Positions 29,117 through 64,000 of a stretch of 64,000 nucleotides of DNA are shown here, in pieces. A model generated the notes under the pieces. That model made no database searches and was not told the origin of the DNA. It was given only the letters and a program-made list of their open reading frames with translations. This DNA comes from Saccostrea cucullata (Eukaryota). Position 1 is the first letter of the stretch, and each line of letters opens with the position of its first letter. The DNA is taken from the NCBI RefSeq assembly GCF_032062105.1, contig NW_026925463.1:186001-250000 (forward strand). The letters are read 5' to 3'. The translations under genes and the position numbers were made by a program.

Positions 29117-30254
29117 CTAGTTGTGGAGAGGTTCGTCTATAACTATGTTAGGAGCAGGTATAATTCCAGGAGGGTCCTTAGCACTTGTAATAGTTGTCGT
29201 TGTAATTGTGGCCATGCTCGTGTCTTCAGTAGTGGCTTCTTCAATCTGTTGTCAAAGAATTAATTAATGATTTTGAAATAAGATTTACCTATACATTAAA
29301 ATACAGTAAAAAAATAATCAGTTGCCTTGCTAGTTTTCTTTGACAAAAATTGTCAATCTTTTTGTTCGGTATTTACTATAAGTATTTGCAGAAAAAATCC
29401 TTATACAAATTTTATAGCTTTTATATAATTTTATGAGCCGTTTAAAATATTAAAATTTAATTTGTCTTATGTTACATACCCTTACCCCCTTCAAATATGA
29501 AAAAATAGAATGTATATTAAATTATTAAGCCCCAGGAAAGAGAAAGAGGCTCCTTGCTGACTCCCTCAGTGATATGCCTTTACTATACATTATACATCTT
29601 TTTAAATAGGCTCCGTGATCGAAAATAAGTGTGTTCGAATCAAGGAATAACTCATAAAACTGTTGATTAAAAAATTTTGATTAAAAAATTGGTAGAAACA
29701 CTTCTTTCGCCAAGCAAAGCCAAGAAAAGTTATTGGTCTTAGGGATGAGACCTTCGAGGTCCCGTGTCACGGTAGGCGTTGGCTCGATAAAGACACCCCT
29801 CATTGCTCAATGGCCCTGAGTGTCGAGTAAAGGGCTAAATTCGAATCCATTCACGGTGTCTCTATCTGAGTGACAAAAATTCTCGAATAGGACGTAAAAT
29901 AACAAACAACCAATCAATCTTTTCAGATAGATAACAATTTTGTCTTACCTTGAGGTAAAGTTGACAGAATGGAGATTGGGTGTTTGACTTTGTAACACCC
30001 GACTTGGCGAGGAGCTTGCACACTGGGTATTCCTCAGTCTTACATAAAGCCATTGAACGACAAGCACCGACCTCCAAACAACGGGCAGCGCAGGTTATTG
30101 CTGCAGTTTTGCAAGTTTTAGGTAGGGTTAGTTCTTGTAGGATTGATGAATTTTCATACGATAAGAAGGAAATTTTTTGAAACAAATTTTCTTTAAATAT
30201 AGATGCAACTTGTGCTGCTGATAAAATTATCAAGAGCAGCAATCCGAAATGCAT
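29117..30254 (-). CDS. Small secreted PAN/Apple-like protein with Thr-rich tail (144 aa), copy 2, intact
   Basis: Exon 1 (30254-29949) encodes the signal peptide MHFGLLLLIILSAAQVAS and the Cys pattern TCAARCLEVGACRSMALC...VCKL...CQLY. Exon 2 (29245-29117) encodes IEEATTEDTSMATITTTTITSAKDPPGIIPAPNIVIDEPLHN*. The intron is phase-0 GT-AG. The PAN assignment rests on the CxxxC-x4-C-x-S...C-x-L pattern. Confidence 0.75.
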
Positions 30255-33245
30255 TTTTCTTCAACAAATTGGATCTAAATGTGAGATTGGATTCCCTTAT
30301 CGAAAACGCATGATTAACGTCACAGAAATAATATAACAAAGGCGTATTCAGTAAATAATTACTTACTGTCGAGAGTGTGCTTGATTATTTATATATTGTA
30401 CTTGGTTAATCCACCGAAAAGTAGGGATTTCTTTCTCTTTTTCTGGTTCAAGGATGAAAGAAATCATGCTGATGTAAAGTCAACAAACCTTAAAAGAAAT
30501 TGCGTGAATATTCTCTATAACTGGATCAGTAATTATACTGTTGGCACATTTCTGTACGTGTAAAGCTTTGACTGTTTTTATCAACATCCACCCTAAGATG
30601 ATGTATAAATGTAATGTGTCCAAAATAGATGAATTATAACTTTGAACATTTTTTGCGTATGAAACATGATTTAATTCTTTTTTACAGTAACAAATTAACC
30701 TATTTTCTTTTATAATAAATATATTGATTGGGACTGTCTAATCGCGAAAATTTTATTCTAGTATATATTTGTATGATTAAAGGATACAAATTCGAAGTAA
30801 TGAATGAAAATTCATGTCTTCGACGAAGAAAAGAAATAATAAGGATTAAGGTGTTTTAGAAAAACAAATATAATTAATATACATGGACGCAAAATAGAAA
30901 AAGTGAAATCGCTTTCATATGTAATCGAGCATAGTTCTAACCCTATTGAAAAAGACAAAATAACAATCATTGCTATATCTGGAACATTTTTTTTTAATTT
31001 AAATAACAAGACAACTTTTTACCCGATAAATAATATAGAGACATTTTTACTTAGAAAGAAATCGAATGCTGAAGGTTTAATTAGACAAGGTATGTAGACA
31101 ATGTACATGATGCAGCATGTTTTGTATGAAATGAATTGTGTTTAAAAACTAAAATAAAAAGGGGGATAATAAAGTTAAAATGGTGATAATTTGCTTGTTT
31201 AAAAATTGCTTTAATTCTAATTCAAAGTGTTCAGGTAGGCCAATAGAAGGTGACGAAATGAAATGAAGCCTTTTCACCAAAGTTCCTCATTTCTTTTTGG
31301 GTTTTCTTTTTGGGCCTCCCCGTGATACATGTATCCACCCCATCTTCAATTCCACACATAGAAGACCGGTGATTTGCCTACACAATTTAAAGTTGTGATA
31401 TATTTATTGTATATATCGCGTGGACATGTAGAACGAAGCAACGGCAGTGCATTGGTAATTGATAAAACGCCTTGCTCGTTGCTTCTTAATGTCTAGTAGT
31501 TGAAAACCGCGGGATTTTTGGATGACACTTCGAAAAGCGAGGTCCCATGCTAAGACAGATATTGGTATGATAAAGAACCCTCACTGCTTAATGGTCCTGT
31601 TTGCCAATAATGGGCTTTTAAAACTCTAAGTGGAATTATTTTATCAAATGACAGCATTACATTACCAAAAAATGCCATGCAGATAAAACCATGTTTTGGT
31701 TGCATGCCTATCGGGATCTCAAGTTTAAAGATATTGATCAATGTTTTGTTTCAAAAATGGAGGATCTCGGAGCAAGACTAGTTTGTATTTTTTCTCTATT
31801 TTTCCTGATAATTGATCCATAAATATATAGGAGCAGAGAAAATACAATTCTGAATATATGTTCTTATTATTTACTCTCTTTTTATTGAATTACTGCAGGA
31901 GATAGAATCAAATTTTTTAAAACTAATTTTAGATATCTTTTGTTTATGATTTTATATACTTTGGTTTGTAGTAATAGACTAGTGAGTGTTTTACTATCCA
32001 TGTATTAAGTTGTCAAATGTTTGCTGTGTATTCATGTACAAACATGGTGTTAAACAAAATAATTGAAATTAGTCACTATCTGATTGCATGCTCTCTGTTT
32101 GTGTTAACATTTAGCTACTTAGTACTAGTTTTGTAAACAGATTAAAAAAACAGTTACGTTATCTTTTGATTTTTAAAGTGCATGCTCCCAAAGCTGAGTT
32201 TTTACAATGAACATTTTCACGTTCAAAACTATGTGTCACAGAGAATCGTTACAGAACCTTAGAAGTGTCATCTGCTGTAAAACAATGCGGGCATAAATTA
32301 TTCTGAAATACATTTCAATGCTAGCATTATGGTTCAGCAAAAATAAAAGCGATATGGAGTAGAAAAATATATCGTGAATAATAAATATCAAACAGAAATA
32401 TCGAAAGAGAAATCAATATATGATATACTAGAAATAATTATCTATCAATGCATATTTAATGTTCAATATTCAACAACCCATCAGACAGATTCGTAACTTG
32501 AAAAAGTTCATCTTTGTTGAAAGAAATGAAAGTCGAGAAGTAAGTTTTAATGACAAAACCCAGGATGGTGTAGCAGATTACGAATTATTTTTTAATTAAC
32601 TGGCCCCAAGATCATGAAACAAACTTAGACTTAAGTCAAATTTTCTATCACCTATAAAATATTCATTTAATTGAGGAATTTAATTAGAAATTTGCAGATA
32701 ACATCTCTTTTGAGAAGCAATATTGAAAAATATTTTAATTGTGGTCTTCTCGACCTTTACAACATTTTATAATAAGATAAAGATTTTGACTTAAGCTTGA
32801 GATGTTTCATGATCCCGGAACCAGGTCAATGTATCTTAGCCCTGATGTTTAAACTTTGAATTCTCTCTAGGATCAATCCAGACGATGGAACAAATATGAA
32901 GAAGAAGTTGACAAGAATGGACTACTAGTACCAGATGGATGCTGAAATCTCGTGTCAGACTGTTGGGAGGGAATTAGAATACAACCATATCCCCAGTCTT
33001 GAGATAAATTAGAGATCTAACATGACCGATATCAACTGGTCACTGCTGACAAATGCGGTAACAACTTAAGTCTTTGTTTGTATGGTTCGTTTTAGCAACT
33101 AAAGGAACTTGGATTTGAATCTTCAAGTGTTAATGTTATTTATGCTCATAGTAAATTCCTTTTTTTACGGAGGACATTCTTGAAAAAGCAATATGCTACT
33201 ATGTAAATCTCATTGAACTACTAATATTTCATTTCATTAATCAAT

Positions 33246-36200
33246 ATGTTGAATGATCTGCAATTATCATTGCAGTTGAAGGCGTTGCAAATAGGATTGT
33301 GGTGGATAGTTTGTTGTTCTTCAATGGTAAGTATTTGACAAATTGCCTTCTGGTAACTACTCAGCTATTATAAAATTGCAACAAACTATAATGAAAAATT
33401 ACACACGCAAACAATGTATTTACAGTACTCTAGATATTTACACTAATTATCAGGCAACATGCCTGATACAACCAGGCATTGTTAATGAGTAAATACAATG
33501 TGTATTAGGCCGATGGCCAAATATGGTAGCCGATGGCTTGTATGTGTGGTGGGCTGCAGGCCCCCATGTATGTGAGGCCTATGGCCTAGTGACAGTGTAA
33601 GGCCGATGGCCATGAGTGAGTTAGGCCGATGGCCTTGCTTGCATGTAAATGGCCGATGGCCTTGAGACAATGAAATGTGGCCGATGGCCTGTGTGCGTGT
33701 GTAAAAGTGGATCTAACATGGATTTAAAATAAACAAAATTTCTTTTGGGGTTAAATAACACACTTGACCAAGTGTGAAATGCCCAAGCAGTTACCTATGA
33801 TCAGATCAAGGTGGTGGTGGGGAGGAAGGTGGGTCTTTGAGATGTAACACTACAGTTGCAGGAACAAGACAAGATGCTAAGAATCTGATTGGCTTATAGA
33901 ATCACGTGATAACAAGCATGTTGAAATATGATACAATCTACATGATTTTATATAAACAATATTTAATAAATTAAATAACATTTTATATAAAACCAACACA
34001 AATGACATTTACAAATTTATTCAAATTGCCTTCTGGTAACTACTCAGCTATTATAAAATTGCAACAAACTATAATGAAAAATTACACACGCAAACAATGT
34101 ATTTACAGTACTCTAGATATTTACACTAATTATCAGGCAACATGCCTGATACAACCAGGCATTGTTAATGAGTAAATACAATGTGTATTAGGCCGATGGC
34201 CAAATATGGTAGCCGATGGCTTGTATGTGTGGTGGGCTGCAGGCCCCCATGTATGTGAGGCCGATGGCCTAGTGACAGTGTAAGGCCGATGGCCATGAGT
34301 GAGTTAGGCCGATGGCCTTGCTTGCATGTAAATGGCCGATGGCCTTGAGACAATGAAATGTGGCCGATGGCCTGTGTGCGTGTGTAAAAGTGGATCTAAC
34401 ATGGATTTAAAATAAACAAAATTTCTTTTGGGGTTAAATAACACACTTGACCAAGTGTGAAATGCCCAAATGAAGTTATTATAATGTCAATATAATAGCT
34501 GAGAGCCCCAAAAGGAATTATCTAACAACACCACTCTTGATCTGATACCAAAACTTTTAAAACTAATGAAAATAGATACAAAGCAAATCATCTTCTTGAA
34601 TTCCAAATTAACCCGTATTGTGAACATGAGATAAAATAAAATGTAAGTTACATTTGCTTTTAAACTACTGTTCATTGTTTAACAATCCGCTCCAAGTTTT
34701 GAGAAAACAAACCAAATACACAACCTGATGTGAACATAAAATGTTAAATTGCATGCTTAACTGATCTATTATATTTACATACACAACTACACAACACAGT
34801 AGCTAGTCTTTTTACACACCTTTTTGACAACACATTGCCTTTTGTGCACGTGACAAAGTTTGATCATCGGAACGAATGTACCTGGTGTAACAGTCTGAGC
34901 TCCATCTACCTAAGGTTTTGATCAAGTGATCTTCAACTTGTCCACCGGCAGCAGAGGTAGCAGCTCCTATTCTGAAAGAGTGGCCATTGAAATTCTCATC
35001 ATCCAAACCCAGCGATTTGAGTATCTGCTTTAGTTTCGTAATGAAAAATTGTCTTGATAATGGATTTCCAGTTTCATCCGTAAATAAGGCTGAAGACATG
35101 ACACAGTTGTACCACTGTCTACGAAGGGTTAAATATTTTAACATGGATTTCACTGGACACACGGTTTGTTCTGACTGAAATAAACGGATTTGAATTCCTT
35201 TCCGAAAAGGGTCAGTTTTAGATCTTTTAAGCGTGATAGTGTAAGCTTTGTAGTTCCGATCCATGACGACATCTTCCACACACAATAGGTTGTCTTGATT
35301 TATATCGTTCACAGTAAATTCCCCACATCGAAGGAATGCGAAAAATGCTAGAGAACAAGCAGCTTGCAGCATGGTATCTAGGAAATAACCGAACATACCC
35401 CGCTGTAAGACATTTTGAATTTGGATCAAAACACTGTATGTAATGGGCCTCCTTTTCTGTTTAGAACTTTGTTGTTTTTGAATTCCCCTCAACACTGTTC
35501 GCAACCTCGCACACGCTTCATCTGATGATAGAGGATTAGAAATACCAGCCTTCACATAATGGAATCTCACAGCTGCAAGATACAATTTGATGGTATTGTA
35601 TGTTAGTTTTAGGGAATTACAGCAATGAGTAACAAAGTAAATAAGGGTTTGTTCTGAGATCTTAGGTGGATTATAATTAGACGCTTCTATTCCAATCGAT
35701 GAAAGGAACTGGCAATATACTGTAAATCCTGTTCTGTATGCCCTCCTTGTATTGTCGCTTATTGAAGATTCACATAAGTCCCTAGACTCTTTCTCTAATA
35801 CAGGATTAAATCTTTCAAGGATGGTACTGGTACTGGCATTGCAGCTGCTGCTGGAGCTACTTCTCTGAATTTTGTCATCATTTATGCCCCCATATCACAG
35901 TGGCAACAACTATGGGATATAATTCTAACAATGCCATAGATAATGCGTCATCGCCGAGGTCTTAAATTTCTGGAGGCCATTTTCCTTGGAACCATTCTCC
36001 GTAATAGTAACCCCCGTAACCAATGGTAGAAGAAGCATCTGTATACAAGGATATGTCTGAGGCACAAGTCACATTTTCCTCCAGAAAGAACGAATGTCCA
36101 TTCCACTGCTTTAGAAATGTTTCCCACATAGCCAAGTCCATTCTGCATTCTTTAGTTAAATTTACATGATGATGTAATTTAGTAACTGAATGGGCCAGAG

Positions 36201-39200
36201 TTAAAAGATAGGAAATAAATGATCTGCCTGCTGGAATAATTCGTGCAGCGAAATTGAAATGCCCTAATATGCTGAGTAGTTCTCTTTTTGTGCAGGAACG
36301 TTTTGACTTTAAATTGCCAATGAGAAAAAATATGCGCTCTATTTTTTCTGGTGGGATTCGTGCTTCCATTTTAACAGAGTCCAATATAATTCCCAAATAT
36401 TCCATTTCTGTACATGGTCCTTTCGTTTTCTTCTCCGAAATAGGAATTCCTATATTACCAAACACCATTGTCAGTATTGCCATACTTCTGAATCCTTCCT
36501 CCTCTGTAGGATCCAATGTCAAGAAATCATCTAACAAATGTAACACCTGCTTGATTTTTTAGTTATTGGTTAAAATCCAACAGACGGCCTGTGAAAGCAT
36601 ATCAAATATTTTGGGGCTACTTCTGCACCCAAACACTAAGCGTTTATAAAAGTAATATTTGTTTCTCCATTTTATGCCATAAAAGGGTTGCACTGTTTTT
36701 GACAAAGGTAATAGCTTGAATGCGTCCACAATGTCAGTCTTGCACATCAATGAATTAACGCCTAATGATTTCAAAATACTTATGGCATCATCAATACGCA
36801 CATACTGTAACGAGTAATCTTCCTTATCGATGAGGCTATTGATGCTAACTTCTGATGCCGAGTCATGAGGCGATGAGAGGTCTACTATCAATCTGTATTT
36901 CTTTGAGTATTTTCCTTCGGCAACGCCAATAGGGCTAATACGATAGACTTCAAACGGTGGTTCATCATATGGTCCATCTACATAACCTTTGTCAATTTCA
37001 TACTTGAGTAAAGTGTCTACTACTTCAGGTTTCTTCCTAGCTGTACTTAAGTTTTTGCATTCAAATGAAGCCAAAGGCAGCTTAGAAATTCCTGTATCAA
37101 ATCCATTCTCCAATCCATTAATGAAAGTATCTACAAAGTTTTTGTCTGGATGATGGTGCAATTCTGACTTAAATGCTTTGATGTTGATCGTAGTTAAAAT
37201 TTCTTGTTTTTTTTAATCTGACGGTAGGGTAAATTCAGGTAGTCATTGCTTCTCACTTTGGTTGCCCTCATTTTGTTTCGTGGTTGTTTTACATTTGTTG
37301 TGTGGAAGTATGTTTTCCCATCTTACAAGTTGAACAAACATGTAACAAGTTACACGAGGGTCTGTTGCATCCTGCCTCGCTGTTAAAATTGTTACATATT
37401 TCTCTGCCCCTATGCGTGATTCTGGGCCTTCCTTGCACGTCCAGTTGGCTTTGTTGTCCTCTGTTTCTGTTCTGTCCTGGAAGTGAACTATTTGGAACTG
37501 CACTGAATTTTGCTCTTGGGCAGAAATGTGAAGTGTGTGTAGTACTGTTGCAATTCTCACATCTAATTACCGTCTGGCCAGCAAAAATAGTCGTAAACAG
37601 TTTCGTGTCCCTAATTGACCAGTCGACTCTGATATTTCTTTGATGAAGTAGGGCACTGGCTCTCGCTGAAAAGACCTTGTGATAATCGTAAAAAGCAGAA
37701 CCACGTGTCATGGACGCCATCTCCACGATATCACGTTCGTATGCATCCAATTCTATCCTTCTTTCCGGATATACTTCACAAATTATGTTTTTGTATTTTG
37801 AAAATGCCAGTATAAACTCGCTAATGGATAAGTTTCTTTGTAATCTGGCATCAGTATTTTGTTTCAGTAAGATATAACGGCCTTCCGTTTCTTGAATTTT
37901 GTGTTCCTCATTTTCGCGAGGTAGAAGTAAGGCGGCAAGATTGACATCCTTACCTTGGATAATGTTGTTCCTGAGGGTTGTGGACACAGTCTCGACATAC
38001 GGGACCGAATCCGATGGAACACGAGAGCCCGATGGTAAATTAACATGGTCCGGTTCCGATGTCGGTGTACTCTGGTTGGGATTTCGTTGTTGTAAATTGC
38101 TGACAACATTGGTAAGTGACAGAAGAGACTGTTGTATTGTATCAATTGCTTGGCTCAGCGAGTCTATTTTGGTTTCATTTATTGACTTCCGCCCAGCCTC
38201 GTTATGACTTGCTCTCTCCGAAGATGCCGGAAGTTCATGATCGTCTTCGCCATTTTGATTCTCACTAATGTCAATTGTTCTTTCGCCTGTCATCGAACTG
38301 CTAAGCTCTTTACGACTGTCTTGTACATTGTCTTTATAAATTTGAAGTAATTGAGATTTCTTTAAAGTAGCTGGCACTACTATATTTGCGTCTTTCAGTT
38401 TTTGTATTAAGTCTGATGACGACCAATTTTCGGGTATATTAGCGTCCCATCTAGATGTGCTTTGATTTTCACTGCGAGTACGCACATTCCTACCTGGAAT
38501 ATCACTTGTCTTTCTTTTCCTTCCCGTCATTTTAATTTCTATAGTCACAATAATAAGAGCCTCGGGCTAAAGTTCAAGTCATTCGACCATAACATGTAAA
38601 CATTGAAACGAAACAAACACACGTGTATCCTGGGTCGGCAGTCACATACTGTAAATGCATTTACCACTTGTAAATAGTCCACATATTATGAATACACTAC
38701 AAAAAATCCAAGTTGGCTAGGAGAAGAATATATTCCGAAGGAATCTAGAGAAAGTCTTTGAGATGTAACACTACAGTTGCAGGAACAAGACAAGATGCTA
38801 AGAATCTGATTGGCTTATAGAATCACGTGATAACAAGCATGTTGAAATATGATACAATCTACATGATTTTATATAAACAATATTTAATAAATTAAATAAC
38901 ATACTAATAATATCTGATTAACTTTTGAAATTATGGATATGTAGTAGTATTTTATGTGATACATATTCTCAATTTCTTGTTTAAGAGTTCAATTGCAGCC
39001 ATATATTGTCCAGCATCTATTAATACGGTAGTAAATGTAAGAAGATGTCCGAGAACAAGTTTCGAATGGAAAAACGCATCAATTTATAAAAACTGTACAA
39101 GCGAGATACGAAGTTGTGTACGACAAACCGACTTTGTGTACCACTGTGTCATAAATACGTACCTCAACGCCACAGTCGAGGTTTGTGCATCCTCTACAAA

Positions 39201-42200
39201 CATCTTAGGTAAGTTTTTGTTTGGTTTGTGTGTTTGTCTTTGTATAAGGTCTTCTATAGTTGTTTAATACCATTTCATGTATGATCATTAGGGAATACTT
39301 GGGCTGAGTACAACACTAAAGGAGCCAGGATCCAGGGAAATGTTGACGCAGTATGTACGTCCTGTCCTTTCAGATATCCATCTACAGATGCATACAAATG
39401 TACGTAAAACAAATTGTCTTTCAAATTATCTTTAATGTTCTCTTTCAATTTCTTTCTTTTTTTGGACAATCACTTGAATACTATGATTCAATAAAAATCA
39501 AAATAGCTATTTTTTGCCCATTTTTTTTAAGTGAAGTATATTTATCATTGTGTGTTAACATTTGAACATTTTCAGCTTTTTCTCTGCAACCACTCATCCA
39601 ATTTCAACCAAAGCATATACGGATGAAGGGAAATAAAAAATGTGAATATCATGGTCCCTGCCCCCCCTAGGGGCCTGAGGGATGAGGTGAAAACCTCTAA
39701 AATTTATGCAATCTTTAAAAATCTTCTTTACCCCTGGACATCAGATGGACAAACTTTTGGCATGATTGTGATTAGAATTGAGTCCTCTACCAAATTGTGA
39801 CCCAAGGGTCAGGGGTTCTACTGGTAGGGCGGGACTCTATTGATTATATGGTGAAAATGCATTATTTCTTTGAAAAACTTCTTCTCTACTCCTGGGCATT
39901 AAATAACTAACTAAGTACATAGTTATGTTGAATAAGACTGCCTCTTCCAAAATTGGCAAATTCATGGTCCCAGGGTCAGGGGTTCTAGTGCTAGAGTGGG
40001 GCTATATAGATTATGCTGTGACAGTGCAATATTTCTTTGAAAATCTTCCCCCTCCTGCGCATTAAATAAACTCACGAAGTATATAGTTATGCTGAATAAG
40101 GTTCCAAAATTATGAATTTCATTGGGTTCTGGTGTTAGGGCGGGGCTCAGTTGATGATATAGTAAAAATGCATAAATCTTTAAAATCTTCTCCTCTGCTC
40201 CTGGGTTTTAAACCAATGAACTACACGGAACGACTTTCCTTAGAAAAACGCGCTAAAATGCAATATCACCGAAGGCGACCTCAGTATATATGAGATCGTG
40301 CGAGCGATCGAAAAAATTAAAATACGACGTTTTTGGCCTTTTGACCCCCAGGTCGAATTCGACTGTTAAAAGTTAAGTAATTAAGGAGTCAATCCTTACG
40401 TTGCGGGTTCGAATCCCACTGTGGGACGTAGCGATCGGTCCTTCGGATGAGACCTTTGAACCGAGGTCCCGTGTCGCAGTAGGTGCTGGCACGAAAAAGA
40501 TCCCTTACTGCTCAATGGCCCTAAGTGCCGAGTATGGGACAAATTTGTAGCTCTCCACCGGCAAAAGGTGGCGTCTTCATATGAGTGAAAAATTCTAGAG
40601 AGGGACGTTAAACAACATACAATCAATCATGACCTCGTTTGTTGAAAGAAAATTGTTTATTCATTGAAAAAAAACGACAAGAAATAATTGTCAACGAAGC
40701 ATACCGTTAACGAGAAAATTCTAAAAATCAACAAAATTGCTGCATAAATCATATGCACTTTCTCAATCGATAAAATTTTTAAAAACTTAAATTGGACCGT
40801 GGATTTTTACCGTTTCAATTTAAATATGTAAAAATAGTAACTAAACACTTACATACATGTAGTCGACATTTGCGCAGCAACATACATCCTTGGAATATTT
40901 ATACCTTTTTTGGATAGACTTTACTTTACCGGTCTTCAGGCCTGGGGGCCATAACAGTGAGATGAGCTCACTGTCGATCTCAGTCTTACTTTAACCAAAG
41001 AAATATATAATGGAAAAGTGAGACCGAGATCAAAAGTGAGCTCGTTTCACTTTTATGGCCCCTGGGCCAGATCCGCAAGATCCTCGCGCTCAGGCGTCTA
41101 TGACGTAATATTTACGTGACTCAACAAAGAAGGGTTAGTCTTGCATACTTTTTGAGTGATAAGGGTTAGTCTTGTACCCACCTGAGAGATTAGGGTTAGT
41201 CCTTGCACAAGTATTCGACTGATAAGGATTAGTCTCGCATCCATCCGAGAGATTAGGGTTAGTCCTTGCACATTATTTGATTGATTAGTGTTAGTAGAAC
41301 ATCTGCCAGTAAGATTTCGTCTAAACGTCTTAGTCCTTGCATACCATCCGCGAGATTAGGGCTAGTGACCCGTTCTTTTGGATACATTAAGAAATTTAGT
41401 TTCTTCTGTAATTTTTGCAAGGTCATAATCCAGCTTCAACGCCATTTCGTTGGTTTATTTACATGAAATAATGATAGTCCGAAAGAATTGACTCTTAGAA
41501 TACGCCTTATTGACAATTTTATCTTGTCGATTTTTTATGCCCCCGTAAACAAAGTTTCGGGGGTATATAGTTTTTGTCGTGTCCGTCCGTCTGTCTGTCT
41601 CTCTGTTTGTCTGCAAAAGCTTTAACCTTTCTCATAACTTTTAATTTAGTGGAGCTATGACTTTCATATTTCACATATGTATTCCTTGTGACAAGACCTT
41701 TCTTTGGGTACCACCAAATTTGACCTTTTGACATTGACCTTGGACTTTGACCCACTTTTACACAAAAATTCCAAACATTTACTTTGGCCATATCTTTTGA
41801 ACAGTAGATACCAGGACAATTATACTTCACGTATATATTTTTTATGGAAAGACCTTTTATTGGATACCACCAACCTTGACCTTTTGACCTTGGAGATTTC
41901 CGTACTTATGAGAAAACTTTAACCTTGGCCATAACTTTTGAACGGTAAGGGATAGAGCTTTCATACTTCACATATGTAATACTTGTGAGAAGACCCTTCA
42001 TTGGATACCATGAACTTTGACCCTTTGACCTTGACCTTGGAGTTCTACCTACTTTAAAAAAGCAAAGCTTGACAAGAATTTTAAAAGGGTTAGGGCTAGT
42101 GCTTTCATACTTTACATATTTAATGCTTGTGACAAGCCCTTTCATTTGATAGGAAGACCTTTGACCTTATGACCTTGACCTTGGAGTTTGACTTACTTAT

Positions 42201-45200
42201 TAATTTTTTAACCTTGGCCATAACTTCTGAACGTTAAGAACTTGGGCTTCCATACTTTACATACGTAATCCTTGTGATAAGACTTTTCATTAGATACCAA
42301 TTACCTTGACCTTTTGACCTTGACCTTGGAGATTTTCATACTTATGAAAAAACTTAAACCTTGGCCATAACTTTTGAACGCTAAGGGCTAGTGATCTCAT
42401 ACTACACATATGTAATCCTTGTGAAAAGACCCTTCATTGGATACCAATATTTCCAAACTGATGAAAACTTTTTTACCCTGGCCTTATTTTCTATTTCAGA
42501 GCTGTATTTCCAGTGAGTTTGCATTTAAGAAAAGTTAATCTTCGCTAATTTGTTGCCATACGGGGGCATCAGTGTTTCACAAACACATCTTGTTCAATGA
42601 ATAAACAGTATTTTCGTTTCAAAAATTGTAAACTAACTTTTAACCCTAGAATTCGATTTTGTGATCATTTTTTTTTCCATCGATCACGTGAACTCATATA
42701 TGCTGTATTTTGCTGAGGTCCAGTTAAGTAAAGTCGTTCCAAATTTTAAAATATATGGCCCCAAAGTTGAAAAGGTCAAAAGTTCGATCGATCGTATTTT
42801 AATTTTTTTTTTTCGATCGCTCACACGATCTCATATAACTGAAGTAGCCTTCGGCGATAGTACATTTTAGCGCGTTTTTCTGAGGACCGGTAAAGTCGTT
42901 CCAAAGTAAGCATACTAAATGTACAGTTATGATAAGCAATGGTGTCTCTTTTAAATTTGTGAATGTTGTGGCCTCTAGTTTAAAACACAAACCAAATTCA
43001 ATTTTTGGAAAGTTGTTACATGATACTTGGGTGACCTAGAAGGCCCATGGACCTCCTGTTATTAATGAGGTTATTAGCAAGAGTGATTGATTTAATTACA
43101 TGAAGCGCTTTTTTAAATATTGTATAATAAAAATATAATGATAATAATGTAACAGACGTGTATGATGGTGATGTCAGATAAACAACAAGGCTGTTGGGTC
43201 AAGCTGAGTTATAGATTTCTAAAAAATAAGTAAGATTTTCTCTTTATTTTGTAGTTCAGGTTTGGATATGAACAAGACAATCTCTTTATTACGATGGAAT
43301 ACGAAAAAAAAAAACCTATAATGAAATAACAAATCATATTATTTTTCTCATCTATTCCAAGCTCTCTGATTGGCTCAAACTTGATCACATGATAAAGTAT
43401 ATAACAGCATATAGACTTGAGTTATTATTTATAGATTTTGAAAGGCATAGCGACTTAATGCTTACAAAATTTGAAATAATTTTCTGTAAAACAACAATAG
43501 CGTTGAATTCAAAACAGCTAACATTGTGTATGACTTGATTTTTTTTCAAGAGAAAAATTACACTTCAACTCCTATTCATAATTGTGATGTTCTGTTATAA
43601 AAAGTAAAACTTTAAGACTGAAGTCATCAGTCATTTGGATCATGTAAAAAGCACGTGTCATCATTACTTCCGATTGAGACAGTGACTGAGAAACTACAGA
43701 TCAAAAAATATTAAATTAATCTGCTTATTGTGTATTTTCTTTGTACCAATAGAGTAATTTGGGGATTTCAAAAATCAATACAAAACTTAATAAGACAAAT
43801 GTAATCTTTTTGAAAAAGGAAATCCCCAAATTACTCTATCGTCTTGTCAATGTAGATAGTTATAGGAATATCTCAATATCTACAAATCAACAATAAAACC
43901 TTGTAGATATCTAAACTAATCATAAAATAAAGTTTACTTTGAAAATATGAAAAAGTGAGACATAAATGTATTTACTATATTTACACATTACTCAATATCT
44001 ATAATCTCTCTCTCAATATACATTTACTCCAAAAAAGTTATTTATGAAATCAAGTGCATAAATTACAGATATCACATTTAATAAAATTATAATCATATCA
44101 CTCATTAGTTTGAAAGAATTACTTACCATGCAAGTAGAAAGGTAGGTCTAAAAGTCAAACGTCTGATTTATAAAACTGACAAAATTACACTTTTATCACC
44201 TTACACAAACAGGCAAAAATTGACCACAAAAGATAAAAAAAAAGGGAAAAACAAAAACCAATCGAAAAGCATAAGACAACACTAAAAAAAACAAATAAAC
44301 TAAAAGATTCAAAATGACCATGACCAGAATATAATTAGAGCCCTAAGGCTAACTCTGGGCCTCTCTGGAAAAGAATAATTTAAAAAATTAAAACACTTAA
44401 CTACAGGTTCAATGAATAATTATATAATTCAGCTGTAGGAGTGTGCTGCAAATAAAAACATACATAATTAATTTAATGAATAGATGCACATGTAATGTAC
44501 ATTGCTATGCAATGTGCACAATATATAAAAACATGAGTCGGTCACAATAATAATGATAATAATAACTAGAAACTCATTACTAGTAATGAGAAGGTGTTCC
44601 ATTGTACTGCTTCCTGTTGGGAGTCTTTCGCACTTTTTTAGCTGGCACTTCTAGCGGAAATAGTTTGCACGGAAATGTCTTTTCTTACGCCAGTATTAGC
44701 TCATAACTTGTATATAAACAAAATAATACACCTTTTTGCGCTACTTACTGTCTCAATCGGAAGTAATGACGACACATGCTTTTTACATGATCCAAATGAC
44801 TGATGACTAAAAATTCAGTCCTAAAGTTTAGAATTCGGTAGCTTACTGTCGCCAAGCAATTGTGAAAACAGATTCTAATTTTGAAGACAGGGAAACGCGC
44901 GGCCTGAAGTGAATTGTATAAAAATTGTTTCTCTAGAAATTTGTAGTACTTTACAGTACTGTAGATCTTTTCCTTCGTTTTGTGCTTTGTGTAGCATACC
45001 GGGGGTATATCACTCAGAACGAATCTTTCTGCAGACCATTTGACTGGTGATAATTTTGAATGTACGAGGGACGTTCAATAAATAATGTCATCGGTGCTCG
45101 GAAAGAAACAAAAACGCTTAATAATAAAACTAAAATATTCTCTTTTAATTAAAACACATGTCCGTAACATTTTATTCAATTTCTAATTGTTTTTGGAACA

Positions 45201-55414: not shown

Positions 55415-58385
55415 CAAGACGGAACATCCCCTAGCAAAGAGCATAATTATCTAGAAATCAAGGCAGTATTCCCCACAATCTGTCTTTCGAACGATAAAAT
55501 AGGTAGTGAATATTCCTTTCCCAACACTAGTACTTGTATCAAAAGTGAAAACCAAGGGGTTTCGGATGAGACTTTGTAAACCGAGGTCCTATGCCAAGAC
55601 TTATGTTAGTATACTACAGAACCCTCTCTGCTCAGTGACCCTAAGTGCCAAGTGTAGAACTAAATTTGAGGCCATTTATCGAAATTATTTAACTCATTTT
55701 ACCAAGTAATAGTATTACTTCTCAGAAAAAATACATAAACGTGATGACTAACTTTTCAATCGTCAACGTCCCTTACATGATATGCAGCAAAACCTTTATC
55801 AACAGCTCTCAGTTGATTCGATACGAAAGAGCATGCTCTACGTATAAACAATTTCTAAAACGAGTTACTTGTATATTACATGTTTTAAAAACAAGTTAAT
55901 GAAAAAGAGTATCTGCAGTCTCATGTAAAGTCTCCATTTTGTAAGTTTTATGGTCTACACATTGACCTTTTCAGCAAAGACATTTTATCATTGTAAGTCG
56001 ATTGCTGACTGACGTTTTTCATACTACCGTAATTGTTAAACCATAATTTACAAAATGAACTGTCGACGGATTTTTCCAGTATTTCCTGACCATGACGAAG
56101 AGAAAACGACAGGTGTGACTGGTTGGCAGGGAATGCTTACTCCTCCATGGCACCTGATTCCACCTTTGATTTTTTGGACGTCCGTGTTTGCTCTACTCTA
56201 ATTTTGTATTGTTTAATAATTTTTTGATCTCGAATACTAGTAGTTCGTTATCTTCATATAGTTCATACAGATTGAGATAAGACCAAAGTTTTGGCATGCA
56301 TATCGAGTTCTAAAGTACGAAGGATATCGATATCGATCAATGTTTTTTTTTAATGGAGGTACCCAGAGCAAGCATAGTATGTATTTTTCTCTTTTTTCCC
56401 TGATAACTGTTCCATAAATATATAGAATCAGAGAAAATTCAATCTAAATGTTGTTATCATTTAGTAGTAGTTATCATTTTATTGAATCATGTACGTATTA
56501 ATTAGATACAGGAGATAAATCAAATTTTAACTGGTTCTAGATATCTTTTTGTTTATGATTTTATATGCTTCGGTTTGCAGAAACAGCGCTTGTACTTATT
56601 TTGTACAAATTTTTGCTTTGTTTACATGTACATGTATAAACATAGTGTTGAGGAAAAGATTTGACATGATGAATTAAATACCGTGTGTTCACATGCTCTC
56701 TGTTTGTGTTAACATTTAGCTATTTGTTTACAGATCATAAGAAAGTTACGTAATCTTATCTTTTGATTTTTAAAGACCATATGCTACCAAAGCTGAAATT
56801 TTATATTTGAGAGCCATTCTCTGTAATGACTTGAAATTTTATATAGGAGCTGTGGCACGCATAATCTCAAAATTTCTCCAAACTCTATATGATAAAAGTC
56901 TTTGATACCCTTAACTGAAATTAGGCAAAAATTGTTTGCTATGTGTTACAGTTACCATGGCAACATGTCTTAACGTTTAAAAAATTGCATTTTAAACATG
57001 TTTAGAGTCCCATAGTTAGCATTTGCGGCAAGCAAACAATTGGCAATGACTTTTTCAAAAAGTTGAAGGGCTGATATCTTACATACACGATAAACATGTT
57101 TGGTAAACCAACTTTTATATACGTTACTATGGGATCAAAGTATTTATAAGTAAAAAAAAAATCATTCATTGAATTTTATAAAGTCATACACGTAAAAATA
57201 GAAATTTTAAAAAAAAACCAAACAAACAAAAGCAAAATGTGTTTGTAAAATACTGATGCCCCCGTATGGCAAAATAGTGAATATTAAACAATTAAATAAG
57301 TTGGTACCCAAAGTAAAGTCTATCGCAAGAAATACAATTGTGAAATATGAATGCCCTTGCACCACCTGTTCAAAAGTTATTGCCAAAGTTAAAGTTTTTA
57401 AAAAGTGGGTCATACTCCCATGTCAAGGTCAAAGGGTCAAAGTTGTTCGTATCCAATGAAACTTCTTGTCACAAGGATTAAATATGTGAAGTATGAAAGC
57501 TCTAGCCCTAACCCTTAAAAAATTATGGTCAATATTTGTTTTTATAAAGTACATAATATATACAAAGATTGCCATGGTTTAAATTCCACATGGAGCCTTG
57601 AAAGTTACACTCTGTATTTGTCTCCTGCTGTACAGAAACAATGAGGGCATAAATTAATCTCAAATTTAGTCATTTGTTCATTTCAGTGCTTGCATAATAT
57701 TGGTAGTTCGGCAAAATAAAAGCGATATAGAGTGGGAAAAAATATATCATAAATGATAAATATGAAACAGAAATATCGGAGGTGAAATCAATATATAGTA
57801 TACTAGAAATAATTATTTATCAATGCATATTTAATGTTCAATATTCAATGTTGAATTATTGAAAGTTGTGAAGTAAGTTTGAATGACAAACCCAGGATGG
57901 TGCAGTAGATTAAGAATTATTTTCAATTAAAGGGTTAATGTATCTTAGCCCTGCTGTTTAACCTTTGAAATCTCTCTAGAATCATGCCAGACGATTGAAC
58001 AAATAAGAAGAAGATGACAAGAATGGACAAATATTACCAGATAGTTGCTGAAATTTCGTGTTGCACGGTTGGGAGGGAATTTGAATACAACCGATTTTCC
58101 CAGTCTTTTGATTAGTCAAAAATGAGATAAAGTAGAGAAATAATATACTCAACATGAACTGGTCCCTTCTGACAAAGGGGGTAACAACTTAAGTCTTTTT
58201 TTGTGTGGTTAATATTAACAACTATAGGAACTACGACTTGAAAATTCAATTGTCAATCTTACTTATGCTCATAATAAATACCTTTTCTAAGGAGGACAAT
58301 CTTAAAAAGCAATATACATGTACTGTAAGTATTATGTAAATCAAATTGAACAGCTAACATTTCATTTTATTAATCAATATTTTGA

Positions 58386-61300
58386 ATGATCTGTAATTTA
58401 TCATGGCAGTGTAAGACGTTGCAAATAGGATTATGGTGGATAGTTTGTTATTGTTCAATGGTAAGAATTTGCCTCATACTATCTGATAAACTTGTGAAAT
58501 TATGGATGTGTAGATGTACCTGTATTTTATGCATATATTCTCAATTTCTTGTTTTAGAGTTTAATTGCAGCCATATATTGTCCAGCATCTATTAACACAG
58601 TAGTAAATGTAATAAGATGTCCGAGAACAAGTTTGGAATGGAAGTCTGCATCAGTTAATAAAAGCTGTACAAGCGAGATACAAAGTTGTGTAGGCCAAAC
58701 AGACTTTGTATACCATTGTGTCATAAATACATACCTCAACGCCACAGTCGAGGTTTGTGCACCCTCTACAAACATCTTAGGTAAGTTTTTTGTGTAATAT
58801 TTTGTTTGTTTTTGATTGTTTGTTTGTTTGGTCTTTGTATAAGTTGTTTTACACCATTACATGTATTATCATTAGGAAATACTTGTGCTGAGTTCAACAT
58901 GGAAGGAGCCAGGATACAGGGACATGTTGACACAGTATGTACGTCCTGTCCTTTCAGATATCCATCAACAGATGCATACAAATGTACGTAAAAGAATCTG
59001 GGATTATTTTTATGTTCTTTGTTTAAAATATTTTACCGCAATAATTCAGTAAAAATTAAGATAGCTATACTCCGACCCATTTTATTTTTTTTTTAATTTA
59101 AGTGAATTATTTGTACCCTACCTAGATTCCTACCTTCTAAGGTTATAGTGTCGAAAGAGTCCAGCAAATGCTCTACCAAGAAACATTGTTTTTTAATTAA
59201 AAATTTTCATTTTTGTAAAAGAAGAGCTTCAAATTTTTGTGCTTCAATATATATGAGAAGTGGTGAAAGACTTAGAAAACACAAACAAATTATCAAATGT
59301 CATTTACATAAATCACATGACTTGTCTGTATTGAATGCAATCATTCCTTAAAATAAAATAAAAAGTTGTCTTTTTATGATGTCATAGATAACTGTTTCTT
59401 TAATAAAATGGAACTTATCAAATGGCATGATTTTAACTTCAAACAAGTCGTGGTTAGAGCTTCTGCTCGAGAGTCGCGAAGTAATGAGTTGATCTTACGT
59501 CGCGGGTTCGAATCACACTGTGGGACATGGAGACCGGTCCCCCGGATGAGACCGTATAATCCGAGGTCCCGTGTCGCAGTAGATGCTGGCATGAAAAAGA
59601 TCTCTCACTGCTTCAAATGGCCCTAAGTGCCGAGTATAGGTCAAAATTTGTAGCTCTCCACCGGAATATGGTGGGGTCTCCATATGTACGAAAATTTATC
59701 GAGAGTGACGTTAAACAACACACAATCAAACTTACTTTAAAGAAAAGGCACTCTGCTTCTACACAGAAGTACTCTGAAGTTGATATTAAAGGCTTAATGG
59801 AGTTTCTCATTGACATCCTCTTTGTAATCGGTTTTCTCGAGGATACATTCTGATGGGATTCCGATGATGGGATGACAAACAGTGCTCTAATATTCGCAGA
59901 CCTTAATTCATGCAAAGCAGAATTTAATGAACAAAAATTGATGAAGAAAACACTTTCTACTTTGCCTTTTATCAATATATATTTTTGTTTTACTGGCTAC
60001 AGACAATAAGGACCAATTAACAGCTAATTTGTATGACAAACTAAGTGAATACCGATACCCAATTGTCAACTCTCATTACTTATGTTGTAATATTCTTTTG
60101 ATGCTGTAATATTCAATTGCATATTTTTCTTTGAATTGATGTATTTTGATATAATGTATATTAAAACTCAAATGTCACATGTCTATCATTAATACTAGTA
60201 TACACACAAAAGAGTTATAATTGTTTTTCACAAAATAGATTTATAAAAATTAAAAGAAAAATATAAAATAAAATAAAGAATAATTTTCAAGGAGATTTTA
60301 ACTCTCTTTTTTTATTTTCTTTAGTCCAGAGCTGCTACAATTTAATCAAGAGAGTCCAACTTCCAACAACTGCGGAGAAAATACTTTCAACTTTACCATC
60401 CTTACAAAATACAACATTACCATCCTTACAAAATACAACTTTACCATCCTTACAAAATACAACCTTCACAATGAGTCCTGTGTAATGTATTAATAAACTA
60501 AATTTTTCTAAAACTGCATATCTCAGTTCAGAAATATCTATGGCAAGCGCTTTTGCTATTTATTTGGAAAATAAAATTTATCTTAAAATTACAGAGTTAT
60601 CTTTCATTTAAGAGAGATATCTCTTAAAAATAGAGATATCTTCCAAATTAAAGAGATATCTCACTTTTAAGAGATATCTCTTTAAGAAAGAGATATCTCT
60701 TGAACTGAGAGATATCTCTTTTTATTAGAGATATATCTCTTTGACTTGAACTATATTCCTATCTCCTTGAGAGATATCTCTTTCGTGAAAAAGATATCTC
60801 TAAACGTTAAAGAGATATCTCTTTCACCTAGAGAGATATCTCTTTAACTTTTGGAGATATCTTTTCGGGTTAAAGAGATATCTCTTAAAGTAAAAGAGAT
60901 ATTTCTCTTAGTGTATCTTATGAGATATCTCTTAAAGTAATAGAGATATCTTTCAAGAGTGTCTAAAAGAGATATCTCTCAAGCAAAAAGAGATATCTCT
61001 TTATTGCAAAAAGATATCTCTTTTCATTATTTTTATTTAAATTCCATTTAAAATGACTTCTCCCTTTACCGGAAGTAAGCTTTTTATTGACGGATTTACA
61101 TTATAAAAGTATTTTTAGATTCGATATATTCATGATATTCTACATTGTACTTTACTAAAAATCACAAGTAATTCAATTTTGTCTAGATTTCAGATTAGAA
61201 ATTGTTGATTAATTCATAAGCTGAGAAAATTCGGTCCATTGCATTTGAGATTATTTATATTATGCTTATTTTCGTTTTCCTGAATATTAAACTTTTAGCA

Positions 61301-63379
61301 TTTTTATCAAGGAAGTTGCCATTATCATTAATTGTTTCAAATAAGGGATTTATAGCATATTCTTGTCTACACTGTGTCACAGTACATATATTATTCTGGG
61401 TAATTGCTTGCTCAGCCTTTTTCTTATAACATCGAACCTATTAAATAAAGACTTTATTTCCTGTTTCGCTTTCGTTTTAAAGTGGAGAATTAATTATTCT
61501 ATTTTAAGGATAACTGGAAAAGAGATATCTCTTTCATTAAAAAAGATATCTCTTAAGCTTTATATCTTTTTTGAAAATCTAACGAGATATCTCTAACTTA
61601 GAAAGATATCTCTTTTTACCTTGTTAAAGAGATATCTCTATAATTTTAAGAGATATCTCTCTAGCTTATAAAATTATCTCTCTAAGTAAATAAGATATCT
61701 CTCTTACATAAAGAGATCTCTTTTGTTTAAAAGAGATATCTCTCTAAGGTATAAAGATATCTATTTTAGTCAAAGAGATATCTCTATAAGCTAAAGAGAT
61801 ATCTCTCTATGCTAGAGAGATATCTATCTATGCTAGAGAGATATCTCTCTTATTGAAAGATTTTTTTTCACGAATAAAGAGTAAAAGGGCTTGCCATAAA
61901 TATCTATAAAAGTAATGCAAAGATGCACGTTTTCTCGTTTCAGTAAATCGAAGGATAACATTGTTTTTATAACGATCATAGTCGTTGGCATAGTGGTTGT
62001 CATTCCTGCAGTGATTTGTGTTGTGTGTTATTTTGGAAGAAAGAAATGTCAAAGAACCCTTAGAGGTAGGTACTGTGAAATGATTCGTTAGGCCTAAAAA
62101 TTGATATTATCTTCTTTCATTCATTTTATATTTAAGTAAAAAACATTTTAAAAAAGTACATTTGTTATACAAAAGGTTGAAGGATTATAGACAGATTTCA
62201 TTTTTTTTTTTTTTGAATACATGTATTATGATATGAAAAACAGTTTCTAAAGCAGTAAATCAATTACTAGTATCCTGAAGACTCTTTTACAAACCCTTAA
62301 TACTGTGTAGGTACTGTGAAATTATAAGTTTTGATTAAAAATTTATATCTTCTTTCATTCAAATAAAATAATATCAATAATTTTTTATTTCAGTAGAAAG
62401 CATTTTTTTAAATTATATTTGTCATACAAAAGGTTGAATGATAATAGACAATTTTCCTTTTTTTTAAATATTTCTTAATTTAATAATTCTTAATTTAATA
62501 ATTTTTTAAAGATGGATTATGATACGGAAAACAGTTTCTATAGCAGTAAATCAATTACAGTATCCCGAACCCTTAACATGCTTAATACTATGTACCTTGT
62601 CTGTGTGGATTCGTTAGGCATCTCTAAGATCGTTTTCTAAGCGTTTAAGACGGTTTGAATATTTTAAGTCTTTGTTTGATCTTTGAATTTATTCGAAATT
62701 CATTTCTAGATCAAGAAGGCAGGTCAAGTGCATTAAGTCCATTAAAATCTGAGGAAAAAATTACCGGTAAGAAAAAATTCAAAATTCTCATTGAATATTA
62801 AAAGGGTGTACTGTAATAAATTCAAAAGATGTATATCTTACAGGAAAAAACTAATTTACTAAGCAACATAACGACAATTCCTCGGAATATACTAGTATAT
62901 TAAAAAAATTAAGTATTTGCTTCAAATACTCTCTATATGAAGATGTTATAATAATCATGATAATACTAATCATTGAATTTGCCTAGCTTATACAAATGAT
63001 ATTCTTTTAATGAGCCATTGTTTGTTTTAAATTATTTTAAATAAAACTGTAAGCATCAAAAGTAAGGTTTATCAATTTTTTCCTCCGTTTCGATTAAAAA
63101 TGCACTGGGGAAGAAGACACAAACAGAAAGTTTACGGTTGCTCTTGAGATAGGACAACACTTTTCTGGATACGGTTATTCTTCGAAACATGATAAAACAC
63201 CAAGAATTCCAGTAGATAGTTCAGGCAAGGCAAAGAAAATCCCGTCTGCGGTCTGGTATAGCAAGACAAAGGAAAAAATAAAGATAGGATATGATGCCCT
63301 AGATGAATACATTAATTGTGATGGAAATCCTCCAGAAGACATATATTACTCTGGTGATCTGGTTATTGATTACAATCAG
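58386..63379 (+). CDS. Single-pass Cys-rich membrane receptor, copy 2, with putative cytoplasmic HSPA12/HSP70-like exon (continues beyond window)
   Basis: Exons: 58386-58460 (signal), 58558-58780, 58876-58983, 60325-60481 (stalk), 61944-62065 (TM IVFITIIVVGIVVVIPAVICVVCYFGRKK), 62710-62766, and ~63101-63379 (FTVALEIGQHFSGYGYS...KIPSAVWY...IGYDALDEY, ending CAG|GTGAG). The first six exons splice in phase. The acceptor of the last exon is uncertain. Confidence 0.7.
59447..59731 (+). mobile_element. Full-length tRNA-derived Deu-type SINE
   Basis: A box TGGTTAGAG, B box GGTTCGAATC, central GGATGAGACC...GAGGTCCCGTGTC and tail GACGTTAAACAACACACAATCAAAC. Truncated copies occur in each PAN-gene intron (~25340-25560, 29700-29920, 50580-50825) and at ~31500 and ~55550. 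Confidence 0.8.
60390..60463 (+). repeat. Coding 24-bp tandem repeat x3 (TLPSLQNT) in receptor stalk
   Basis: TTACCATCCTTACAAAATACAAC is repeated three times here; the paralogous exon at 48577-48685 has a single unit. Confidence 0.85.
60539..61898. mobile_element. Foldback-like DNA transposon, TATGGCAAG termini, 6-bp TSD AATATC, AGAGATATCTCT arrays
   Basis: TATGGCAAGC...GCTTGCCATA with AATATC on both flanks and dozens of palindromic AGAGATATCTCT motifs at both ends. Confidence 0.85.
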
Positions 63380-63639
63380 GTGAGCTAAAGTTGACCATTA
63401 CGATTTTACCCAGTCGTCTGATATACTTTTTTCTTTAAAATACAAAATTCAAAGTACTTCATCCAGAAATAAATGGGGAAATAAAATACGAGAGATAGAT
63501 TTAAGATTCAACTAGCAAAAAACATATGTGCACATATGATTGAAAAAAAAGAAATTTAAAGGGATTGATGAATTACTATGCACACATCGGGACAGTTCTA
63601 GAAATTTAAGGACTTGAGAATTTCATTAAAATAGTGTTA

Positions 63640-64000
63640 TTGTATTTACCTGTACTTGCATACGGAGTTTATATCTCTCAGTTGATTCGATATACGCAAG
63701 AATATGCTGTACGTATGTATAATATCTAAAACGAGATAAATTATTGACAAACAAGTTGATGAAACAAGAGTATCAGCAGTCTCGTTTAAGTCATCATTTT
63801 GTAAGTTCTTTGGTCGATACAATGCCCTTGTCAATAAATACAATTTATCACTGAGTCTAATGCTGACAGTTTTCATACTAATTGTTAGTCCATTATTTAC
63901 ACATTGAATTGACGACGGATTTTTCTGTTATTTCCCGATCATGACAAGGACCACACGGCGGTTGTGACCGGTCAACAGGGGATGCCCACTCCTCCGTGGC
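63640..64000 (+). mobile_element. Penelope-like retroelement 3' relic
   Basis: GVYISQLIR-like coding remnant followed by the GGTCAACAGGGGATGC.TACTCCTCC motif. Related relics lie at ~420-500(-), ~21400(-), 22000-22750(-), 32900-33200, 55790-56250 and 59760-59970. Confidence 0.6.

What the first reader, a model, noticed from the sequence alone, without database searches (positions are those of the whole stretch)
58386..63379. Cys-rich membrane receptor apparently fused to a degenerate HSPA12/HSP70 ATPase-like domain
Seen: six in-phase exons give a signal peptide, a Cys-rich ectodomain, an N-glycosylated stalk, one TM helix with a basic stop-transfer (GRKK) and a short linker. The next open stretch (63101-63379, ending in a good CAG|GTGAG donor) reads KFTVALEIGQHFSGYGYSSKHD...KKIPSAVWY...KIGYDALDEY...YYSGD. 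Known: this parallels the start of HSPA12-type HSP70 NBDs (VAIDFGTTxSGYAFS...KTPTxxL...FGYEAExxY...YF), a family greatly expanded in bivalves. Here the phosphate-1 motif DFGTT is replaced by EIGQH. Inference: a receptor with an intracellular HSP70-fold pseudo-ATPase used as a signalling or scaffold domain, an architecture I do not recognise as described. Caveat: the natural-looking acceptor reads TTTCG|AT TAA (no AG, in-frame stop). Either this allele is damaged, the assembly has errors, or the weaker in-phase AAG at 63111-63113 is used.
Basis: partly seen in the sequence, partly recalled or inferred. Interest (0 to 1): 0.85.

Follow-up and report, generated by a model that had tools for sequence, protein, structure and literature searches.

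The report
Oyster receptor with degenerate Hsp70 domain
Oysters have a cell-surface receptor gene whose only inner domain is the worn-down ATP-binding half of an Hsp70-type chaperone; the fusion is old and shared by two oyster genera, but this copy is probably broken and a similar design with extra adaptor domains was published in 2021.

Summary
The fusion is real; this copy is probably damaged. The window is from the oyster Saccostrea cucullata. Six in-phase exons (signal peptide, 10-Cys ectodomain, stalk, TM, linker) are confirmed. The 63098-63379 exon opens an HSPA12-type nucleotide-binding domain (NBD). Three more exons beyond the window complete it, with no substrate-binding domain. An Ostrea edulis RefSeq protein (XP_056018066.1) joins the same ectodomain, TM and NBD exon through a canonical acceptor, and both halves match this locus and its close paralogue best. 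Seven more S. cucullata contigs show ectodomain-then-NBD co-location (coordinates only). Both phosphate loops are altered while the adenosine motif is kept, so a pseudo-ATPase is likely but untested. dN/dS of 0.35-0.58 shows past selection. TTTCG is not the acceptor: the ancestral one lies at 63039-63040 (now AA), and the last exon has a 4-nt frameshift. Every copy I could read in full has a lesion, and no RNA run was listed. Kaur et al. 2021 already list oyster Cys-rich+TM+TRADD-N+HSP70 receptors; this form lacks DED/TRADD-N. The scan noted the same architecture on another contig (s1-721927).

The parts
58386..58460 (+). Exon 1, signal-peptide-like. This ATG is open only in this copy; the paralogue starts at a downstream ATG that reads TGT here.
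58558..58780 (+). Exon 2, first part of the Cys-rich ectodomain of a large uncharacterised mollusc family (at least 150 matches in this genome; no Pfam family)
58876..58983 (+). Exon 3, second part of the Cys-rich ectodomain
60325..60481 (+). Exon 4, last ectodomain Cys and Ser/Thr-rich stalk with an 8-residue repeat (three copies here, two in the paralogue) carrying N-glycosylation sequons
61944..62065 (+). Exon 5, single TM helix and basic stop-transfer
   Evidence: KD 3.31
62710..62766 (+). Exon 6, 19-codon cytoplasmic linker, phase-1 donor; no room for DED or TRADD-N
63039..63097 (+). Decayed 5' end of ancestral exon 7: acceptor position reads AA (AG in two other oysters), net 2-nt loss against the paralogue, TAA at 63095-63097
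   Evidence: positional homology, inferred
63111..63116 (+). Two in-frame, stop-free AAG candidates (63111-63113, 63114-63116); the first is the first AG after the pyrimidine run; use not shown
63098..63379 (+). Exon 7, start of the HSPA12-type NBD with phosphate-1 motif EIGQH. Exons 8-10 lie beyond the window at G000:C7600:252246-252440, 252631-252793 and 252985-253561; exon 10 has a 4-nt deletion near 253174.

Best explanation
This is a copy of an oyster (Ostreidae) gene for a type I single-pass receptor: Cys-rich ectodomain, glycosylated stalk, one TM, a 45-60 residue linker, and a compact HSPA12-derived NBD as the only cytoplasmic domain. It arose by exon shuffling within a large receptor family with exchangeable inner domains (inferred). 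The intact form most likely works as a sensor or immune-type receptor: ligand binding clusters the receptors, and the inner Hsp70-fold domain serves as a non-hydrolysing docking platform, possibly still nucleotide-binding, not as a chaperone (inferred, untested). The copy in the window has lost its exon-7 acceptor and has a frameshift in exon 10, so it is probably a pseudogene for the NBD part. At most it gives a 530-residue product lacking the adenosine motif, or a short-tailed receptor. Shown: exon structure, homology, fusion in an Ostrea gene model, motif changes, lesions, dN/dS below 1. Inferred: expression, loss of ATPase activity, signalling role.
For: Exons 7, 9 and 10 match an HSPA12 profile in order (positions 6-76, 126-177, 201-377 of 386; 0 of 200 shuffles for the window's exons). 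The O. edulis C-lobe passes the Pfam HSP70 cut-off (21.7 vs 20.6 bits), and its model matches Hsp70 NBD structures (E 1.9e-7). XP_056018066.1 is fused, and its ectodomain's best match in this genome is this locus. The four NBD sequences form one clade, 100/100. NBD dN/dS is 0.58 (0.41-0.79) between paralogues, 0.49 between O. edulis and a third oyster, and 0.35-0.39 between genera. 10 of 32 short-frame last exons lie downstream of an ectodomain exon, against 0 of 56 long-frame ones (p 1e-5). Lesions.
Against: No transcript or read evidence (one search listed no run). No intact full-length member was seen: the O. edulis reference has a 1-nt frameshift in exon 8, paralogue C8384 has an insertion in the 5' part of exon 7, and a third copy has several frameshifts. 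No full-length fused protein came up among 1.84 billion representatives. Exon 8 did not score against the profile. The structure model used an alignment that included canonical HSPA12 sequences, so it leans to that fold. The Glu of connect-1 and the GG of the adenosine motif are kept, so residual activity is not excluded. The lesions could be assembly errors.
Confidence: 0.62

Rival explanations
1. The window copy is live: exon 6 splices to the AAG at 63111-63113, and the exon-10 deletion is an assembly error or a tolerated truncation.
For: This AAG is the first AG after the pyrimidine run and is in frame through exons 7-9. Exons 1-9 carry no stop in that model. The assembly has 23,869 contigs.
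Against: A 4-nt deletion outside a homopolymer, GG to GV in the adenosine motif, a new stop near the end and the lost ancestral ATG all fall in this copy. The AAG is absent from the paralogue.
Confidence: 0.13
2. The NBD is a relic in living oysters. The working product is a receptor with a short or truncated tail (a decoy), and the NBD exons are decaying in every lineage.
For: All four copies read through have NBD-side lesions, while exons 2-6 are intact in the window and C8384 with dN/dS 0.42. Exon 7 alone gives 0.90 between the paralogues.
Against: A third oyster has intact exons 7 and 10 with canonical acceptors. NBD dN/dS is below 1 overall. Several other loci have open last exons of 216-267 codons.
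Confidence: 0.15
3. Two neighbouring genes, a short-tailed receptor and a free-standing degenerate HSPA12, as RefSeq models the NBD part in S. cucullata (XP_062607135.1).
For: The RefSeq model starts at exon 7. The paralogue has an ATG just before FTVALE. Neither Saccostrea copy has a good acceptor.
Against: There is a canonical phase-1 acceptor in two other oysters and a fused O. edulis model. The intron is only about 270-350 bp. The ATG is not conserved. The order is the same in both genera.
Confidence: 0.06
4. The intact NBD is an active ATP/ADP switch with unusual motifs.
For: The adenosine GG, connect-2 P..GA and connect-1 Glu are conserved. Human HSPA12A binds a receptor tail in an ADP/ATP-dependent way (PMC6345817).
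Against: Phosphate-1 D(L/F)G(T/S)(T/A) is EIG(Q/R)H and phosphate-2 D(L/A)GGGT is K(T/I)GHA(G/A) in all members read.
Confidence: 0.04

Closest known systems
Crassostrea Cys-rich/TM/(DED)/TRADD-N receptors with variable C-terminal effectors, incl. HSP70 (Kaur et al. 2021 eLife, PMC8195603; e.g. XP_022302694.1, XP_022302701.1, 904-998 aa)
   Same: Oyster single-pass receptor with a Cys-rich outer region and a cytoplasmic HSP70 domain; proposed immune or apoptotic role.
   Different: No DED, alpha-rich region or TRADD-N here: the NBD follows the TM after 45-60 residues (about 670 aa in all). The NBD motifs are degenerate. Identity of the two ectodomains was not tested; those sequences were not retrievable.
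HSPA12 subfamily of HSP70 (89 of 113 HSP70 genes in Magallana gigas, PMC11268181)
   Same: NBD homology, with motifs in the same order; best database hits are HSPA12A/B-like proteins.
   Different: Membrane-anchored, no C-terminal substrate-binding region, shortened lobes, both phosphate loops altered, long stem branch (3.6 changes per site). That survey reports no TM members (the word transmembrane does not occur).
Human HSPA12A as adaptor of the SorLA cytoplasmic tail (PMC6345817)
   Same: An HSPA12 acting at a type I receptor's tail rather than as a general chaperone.
   Different: A separate protein acting in trans; the two-hybrid clones were C-terminal fragments, a region missing here.

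Membership tests
HSP70 / HSPA12 | Actin-like Hsp70 NBD by profile and fold | tested here: met
   (exons 7, 9, 10; exon 8 not detected)
HSP70 / HSPA12 | Intact phosphate-1 motif (D-x-G-T/S) | tested here: not met
   EIGQH / EIGRH
HSP70 / HSPA12 | Intact phosphate-2 motif (D-x-GGGT) | tested here: not met
   KTGHAG / KIGHAA across the exon 9-10 joint
HSP70 / HSPA12 | Adenosine motif GG(F/Y) and connect-2 P...GA | tested here: met
   IGGY in C8384, O. edulis and the third oyster; IGVY and out of frame in the window copy
HSP70 / HSPA12 | C-terminal substrate-binding region after the NBD | tested here: not met
   stop 1-21 codons after the GA motif in all copies
HSP70 / HSPA12 | Nucleotide binding or hydrolysis | not testable with these tools
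   needs purified protein
Crassostrea Cys-rich TRADD-N receptors (Kaur 2021) | Signal/TM + Cys-rich outer region + TM | tested here: met
Crassostrea Cys-rich TRADD-N receptors (Kaur 2021) | Same Cys-rich domain as the published proteins | not tested
   the published sequences could not be fetched by accession
Crassostrea Cys-rich TRADD-N receptors (Kaur 2021) | DED or alpha-rich region and TRADD-N between TM and effector | tested here: not met
   linker about 60 residues in XP_056018066.1; no PF13820 hit at the locus

The most novel reading that the evidence does not exclude
Oysters express intact receptors in which an Hsp70-fold NBD directly under the membrane is the signalling domain, either a nucleotide-sensing switch or a bait for pathogen factors and co-chaperones aimed at Hsp70: a receptor class analogous to receptor pseudokinases.
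Probability: 0.25. Interest if true: 0.75.

Novelty: new variant of a known kind. Interest (0 to 1): 0.45.

Why it matters
The large HSPA12 expansion of bivalves is usually read as stress-chaperone adaptation. An HSPA12 NBD reused, without its substrate-binding half and with altered phosphate loops, as the sole inner domain of a surface receptor suggests that part of the expansion is signalling or immune hardware. It would also be a small system for asking what the HSPA12 NBD binds. The value of this locus is limited because the copy is probably broken and a related architecture is published.

Tried and rejected
Pfam and PDB sequence searches of exon 7 alone: no hit. RNA runs: none listed for 58300-63500. 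TTTCG as a damaged acceptor: rejected, since the phase differs between paralogues and the stretch is colinear with Ostrea coding sequence. A hidden micro-exon in intron 6 or other AGs: all except 63113 and 63116 reach a stop within 28 codons. Ectodomain fold: model pLDDT 42.5 and best Z 2.6, uninformative. Atlas: only unnamed mollusc clusters. BRCA2, phycobilisome-linker and arsenate-reductase hits of exon 10: not in line with the other evidence, treated as chance. An intact exon 8 in metagenomes: none found. TRADD-N scan of the genome: too insensitive to judge the other loci. The exon 9 and summed NBD dN/dS used a wrong frame and were replaced. The joined model was only translated locally to check frames and was never searched or folded.

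Full report
Source. The window is G000:C7600:186001-250000. A RefSeq protein of Saccostrea cucullata, XP_062607135.1, is identical to exons 7 and 8 and lies on a contig of the same length, 259,238 bases, so the genome is that oyster.

Observation. The six receptor exons have GT-AG ends, join in phase and carry no stop. They give a signal-peptide-like start, ten ectodomain cysteines, a stalk with a triplicated 8-residue repeat and three sequons, one TM (KD 3.31) with GRKK, and a 19-codon linker ending in phase 1. The open stretch 63098-63379, its donor, the TAA at 63095-63097 and the AAG at 63111-63113 are as reported.

The rest of the domain. Three more exons follow beyond the window, at C7600:252246-252440, 252631-252793 and 252985-253561. 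Against a profile of HSPA12-like database proteins, exons 7, 9 and 10 match in order at positions 6-76, 126-177 and 201-377 of 386. For the window's exons none of 200 shuffles reached the score. Exon 8 did not score, and the ectodomain control did not either. The profile's members were picked by their match to exon 10, so only exons 7 and 9 are independent tests there. Independently, the O. edulis counterpart passes Pfam's HSP70 cut-off. Its predicted structure (pTM 0.70) matches Hsp70 NBD structures, best E 1.9e-7, TM-scores about 0.4; that model was guided by an alignment holding canonical HSPA12s. The frame stops 1-21 codons after the connect-2 GA motif in all copies, so there is an NBD and no substrate-binding region.

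Motifs. Canonical relatives have D(L/F)G(T/S), EPEAA, D(L/A)GGGT, VGG(F/Y).ES and P...GA. This subfamily has EIG(Q/R)H, MES(E/D)CV, K(T/I)GHA(G/A), IGGY and P...GA. Both phosphate loops are altered, while the adenosine pocket and the connect-1 Glu are kept. From general knowledge of Hsp70 this argues against hydrolysis but leaves nucleotide binding open. Nothing here measures either.

The fusion is not peculiar to this contig. O. edulis XP_056018066.1 (354 aa) has signal peptide, the same ectodomain, TM, linker and exon 7 in one model, with the same exon layout and a canonical TAG|AT phase-1 acceptor. Its ectodomain's best match in the Saccostrea genome is this locus, then paralogue C8384. A third oyster-like source in a JGI sample has exons 7 and 10 intact with canonical acceptors. 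The four last exons form one clade, 100/100, on a long stem. dN/dS for the NBD is 0.58 (0.41-0.79) between the window and C8384, 0.49 (0.35-0.68) between O. edulis and the third source, and 0.35-0.39 between genera, so the domain was coding and selected.

Wider family. In this genome, 10 of 32 NBD last-exon hits with short frames lie 7-25 kb downstream of an ectodomain exon on the same strand, against 0 of 56 long-frame canonical ones (Fisher p 1.4e-5; 1.1e-4 without the two query loci). The contigs are C7600, C8384, C8004, C23404 (twice), C4905, C19604 (same spacing as C4905, probably its allele), C11846, C21137 and C20970; C8072 fits by exon 7. Hits are not independent and both lists are lower bounds.

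This copy is damaged. The C8384 stretch around TTTCG reads P-S-V-S-I-K-K-C and is colinear, without gaps, with Ostrea P-T-V-L-K-E-T-G up to R-x-F. TTTCG is therefore exon sequence. Counting back, the ancestral acceptor falls at 63039-63040, which reads AA in both Saccostrea copies, and the window has further lost two bases there (positional inference). The only stop-free in-frame entries are the AAGs at 63113 and 63116. Using the first gives 530 residues, ended by a 4-nt deletion in exon 10 that puts the adenosine and connect-2 motifs out of frame. The stranded part also has GG changed to GV. Other copies are damaged too: C8384 has a 1.27-kb repeat inserted in the 5' part of exon 7, a third copy (C5854/C9594/C6123) has frameshifts and a 7-kb interruption of exon 9, and the O. 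edulis reference has a 1-nt frameshift in exon 8, which is why RefSeq splits it into 354 and 270 aa. No full-length fused protein appeared among 1.84 billion representatives, and no RNA run was listed. Unexplained: both Saccostrea copies share AA at the old acceptor, yet their NBDs show dN/dS below 1 since duplication.

Mechanism. The ectodomain belongs to a very large uncharacterised mollusc family (517-729 candidates in this genome). Kaur et al. 2021 describe C. virginica receptors with a Cys-rich outer domain, TM, DED and TRADD-N followed by exchangeable effectors such as STAND, HEPN, AIG GTPase, ankyrin, B-box and HSP70 (PMC8195603). I read the present gene as a stripped-down design of that kind, with rapid birth and death of copies. 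Ligand would cluster the receptor, and the NBD would act as a non-hydrolysing docking surface or bait. Human HSPA12A acting on the SorLA receptor tail in an ADP/ATP-dependent way (PMC6345817) is a loose precedent. All functional steps are inference.

Verdict. The architecture is real and shared by Ostrea and Saccostrea (about 0.9). The window copy is probably broken in its NBD part (about 0.8). It works like the published oyster Cys-rich receptors but fails their TRADD-N membership test, and it is HSPA12-derived but not a canonical HSP70. It is a new variant of a known kind, and the scan had already noted it on another contig (s1-721927). Interest 0.45. The joined model was not searched; searches were exon by exon or with stored proteins.

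Noticed in passing
window 33250-50190 (+): Tandem upstream copy of the receptor front: exon 1 near 33250-33326 (start out of frame), exon 2 38989-39207 (86% aa), exon 3 39294-39398 (Cys to Trp), exon 4 from 48579, a different TM-like stretch at 50042-50185, and no NBD exons.
   Followed up: partly
window 34815-38566 (-): About 3.7-5.5 kb of extra DNA in intron 1 of the tandem copy, with long ORFs that look like reverse transcriptase and tyrosine recombinase (DIRS-like retrotransposon; from memory, not tested).
   Followed up: no
window 60540-61895: 1.35-kb insertion in intron 4 rich in GAGATATCTC units, absent from paralogue C8384.
   Followed up: no
G000:C7600:250049-250920 and C8384:18494-19769: The same interspersed element with internal ~166-bp tandem repeats sits in intron 7 here and inside exon 7 of the paralogue, between T-runs (Helitron/HINE-like; from memory).
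   Followed up: partly
window 63655-64000: High-copy interspersed repeat, at least 40 matches near 88% identity.
   Followed up: no
window 2101-4902 (+), 14455-15147 (+), 17050-17574 (+), 29865-30260 (-): Long ORFs resembling the TGS1 N-terminal region, a Tc1-type transposase, profilin and a small secreted PAN/apple-like protein (from memory, untested).
   Followed up: no
L044 (G000:C347:3964-6535): Another degenerate HSPA12-like NBD (AIKFGTN, VEEAAA, VGEF) with a short last exon; not in the receptor clade.
   Followed up: partly
P0005, P0006, P0008, P0010, P0011, P0018: Several bivalve HSPA12-like database proteins carry a duplicated C-lobe or NBD fragment in tandem.
   Followed up: no
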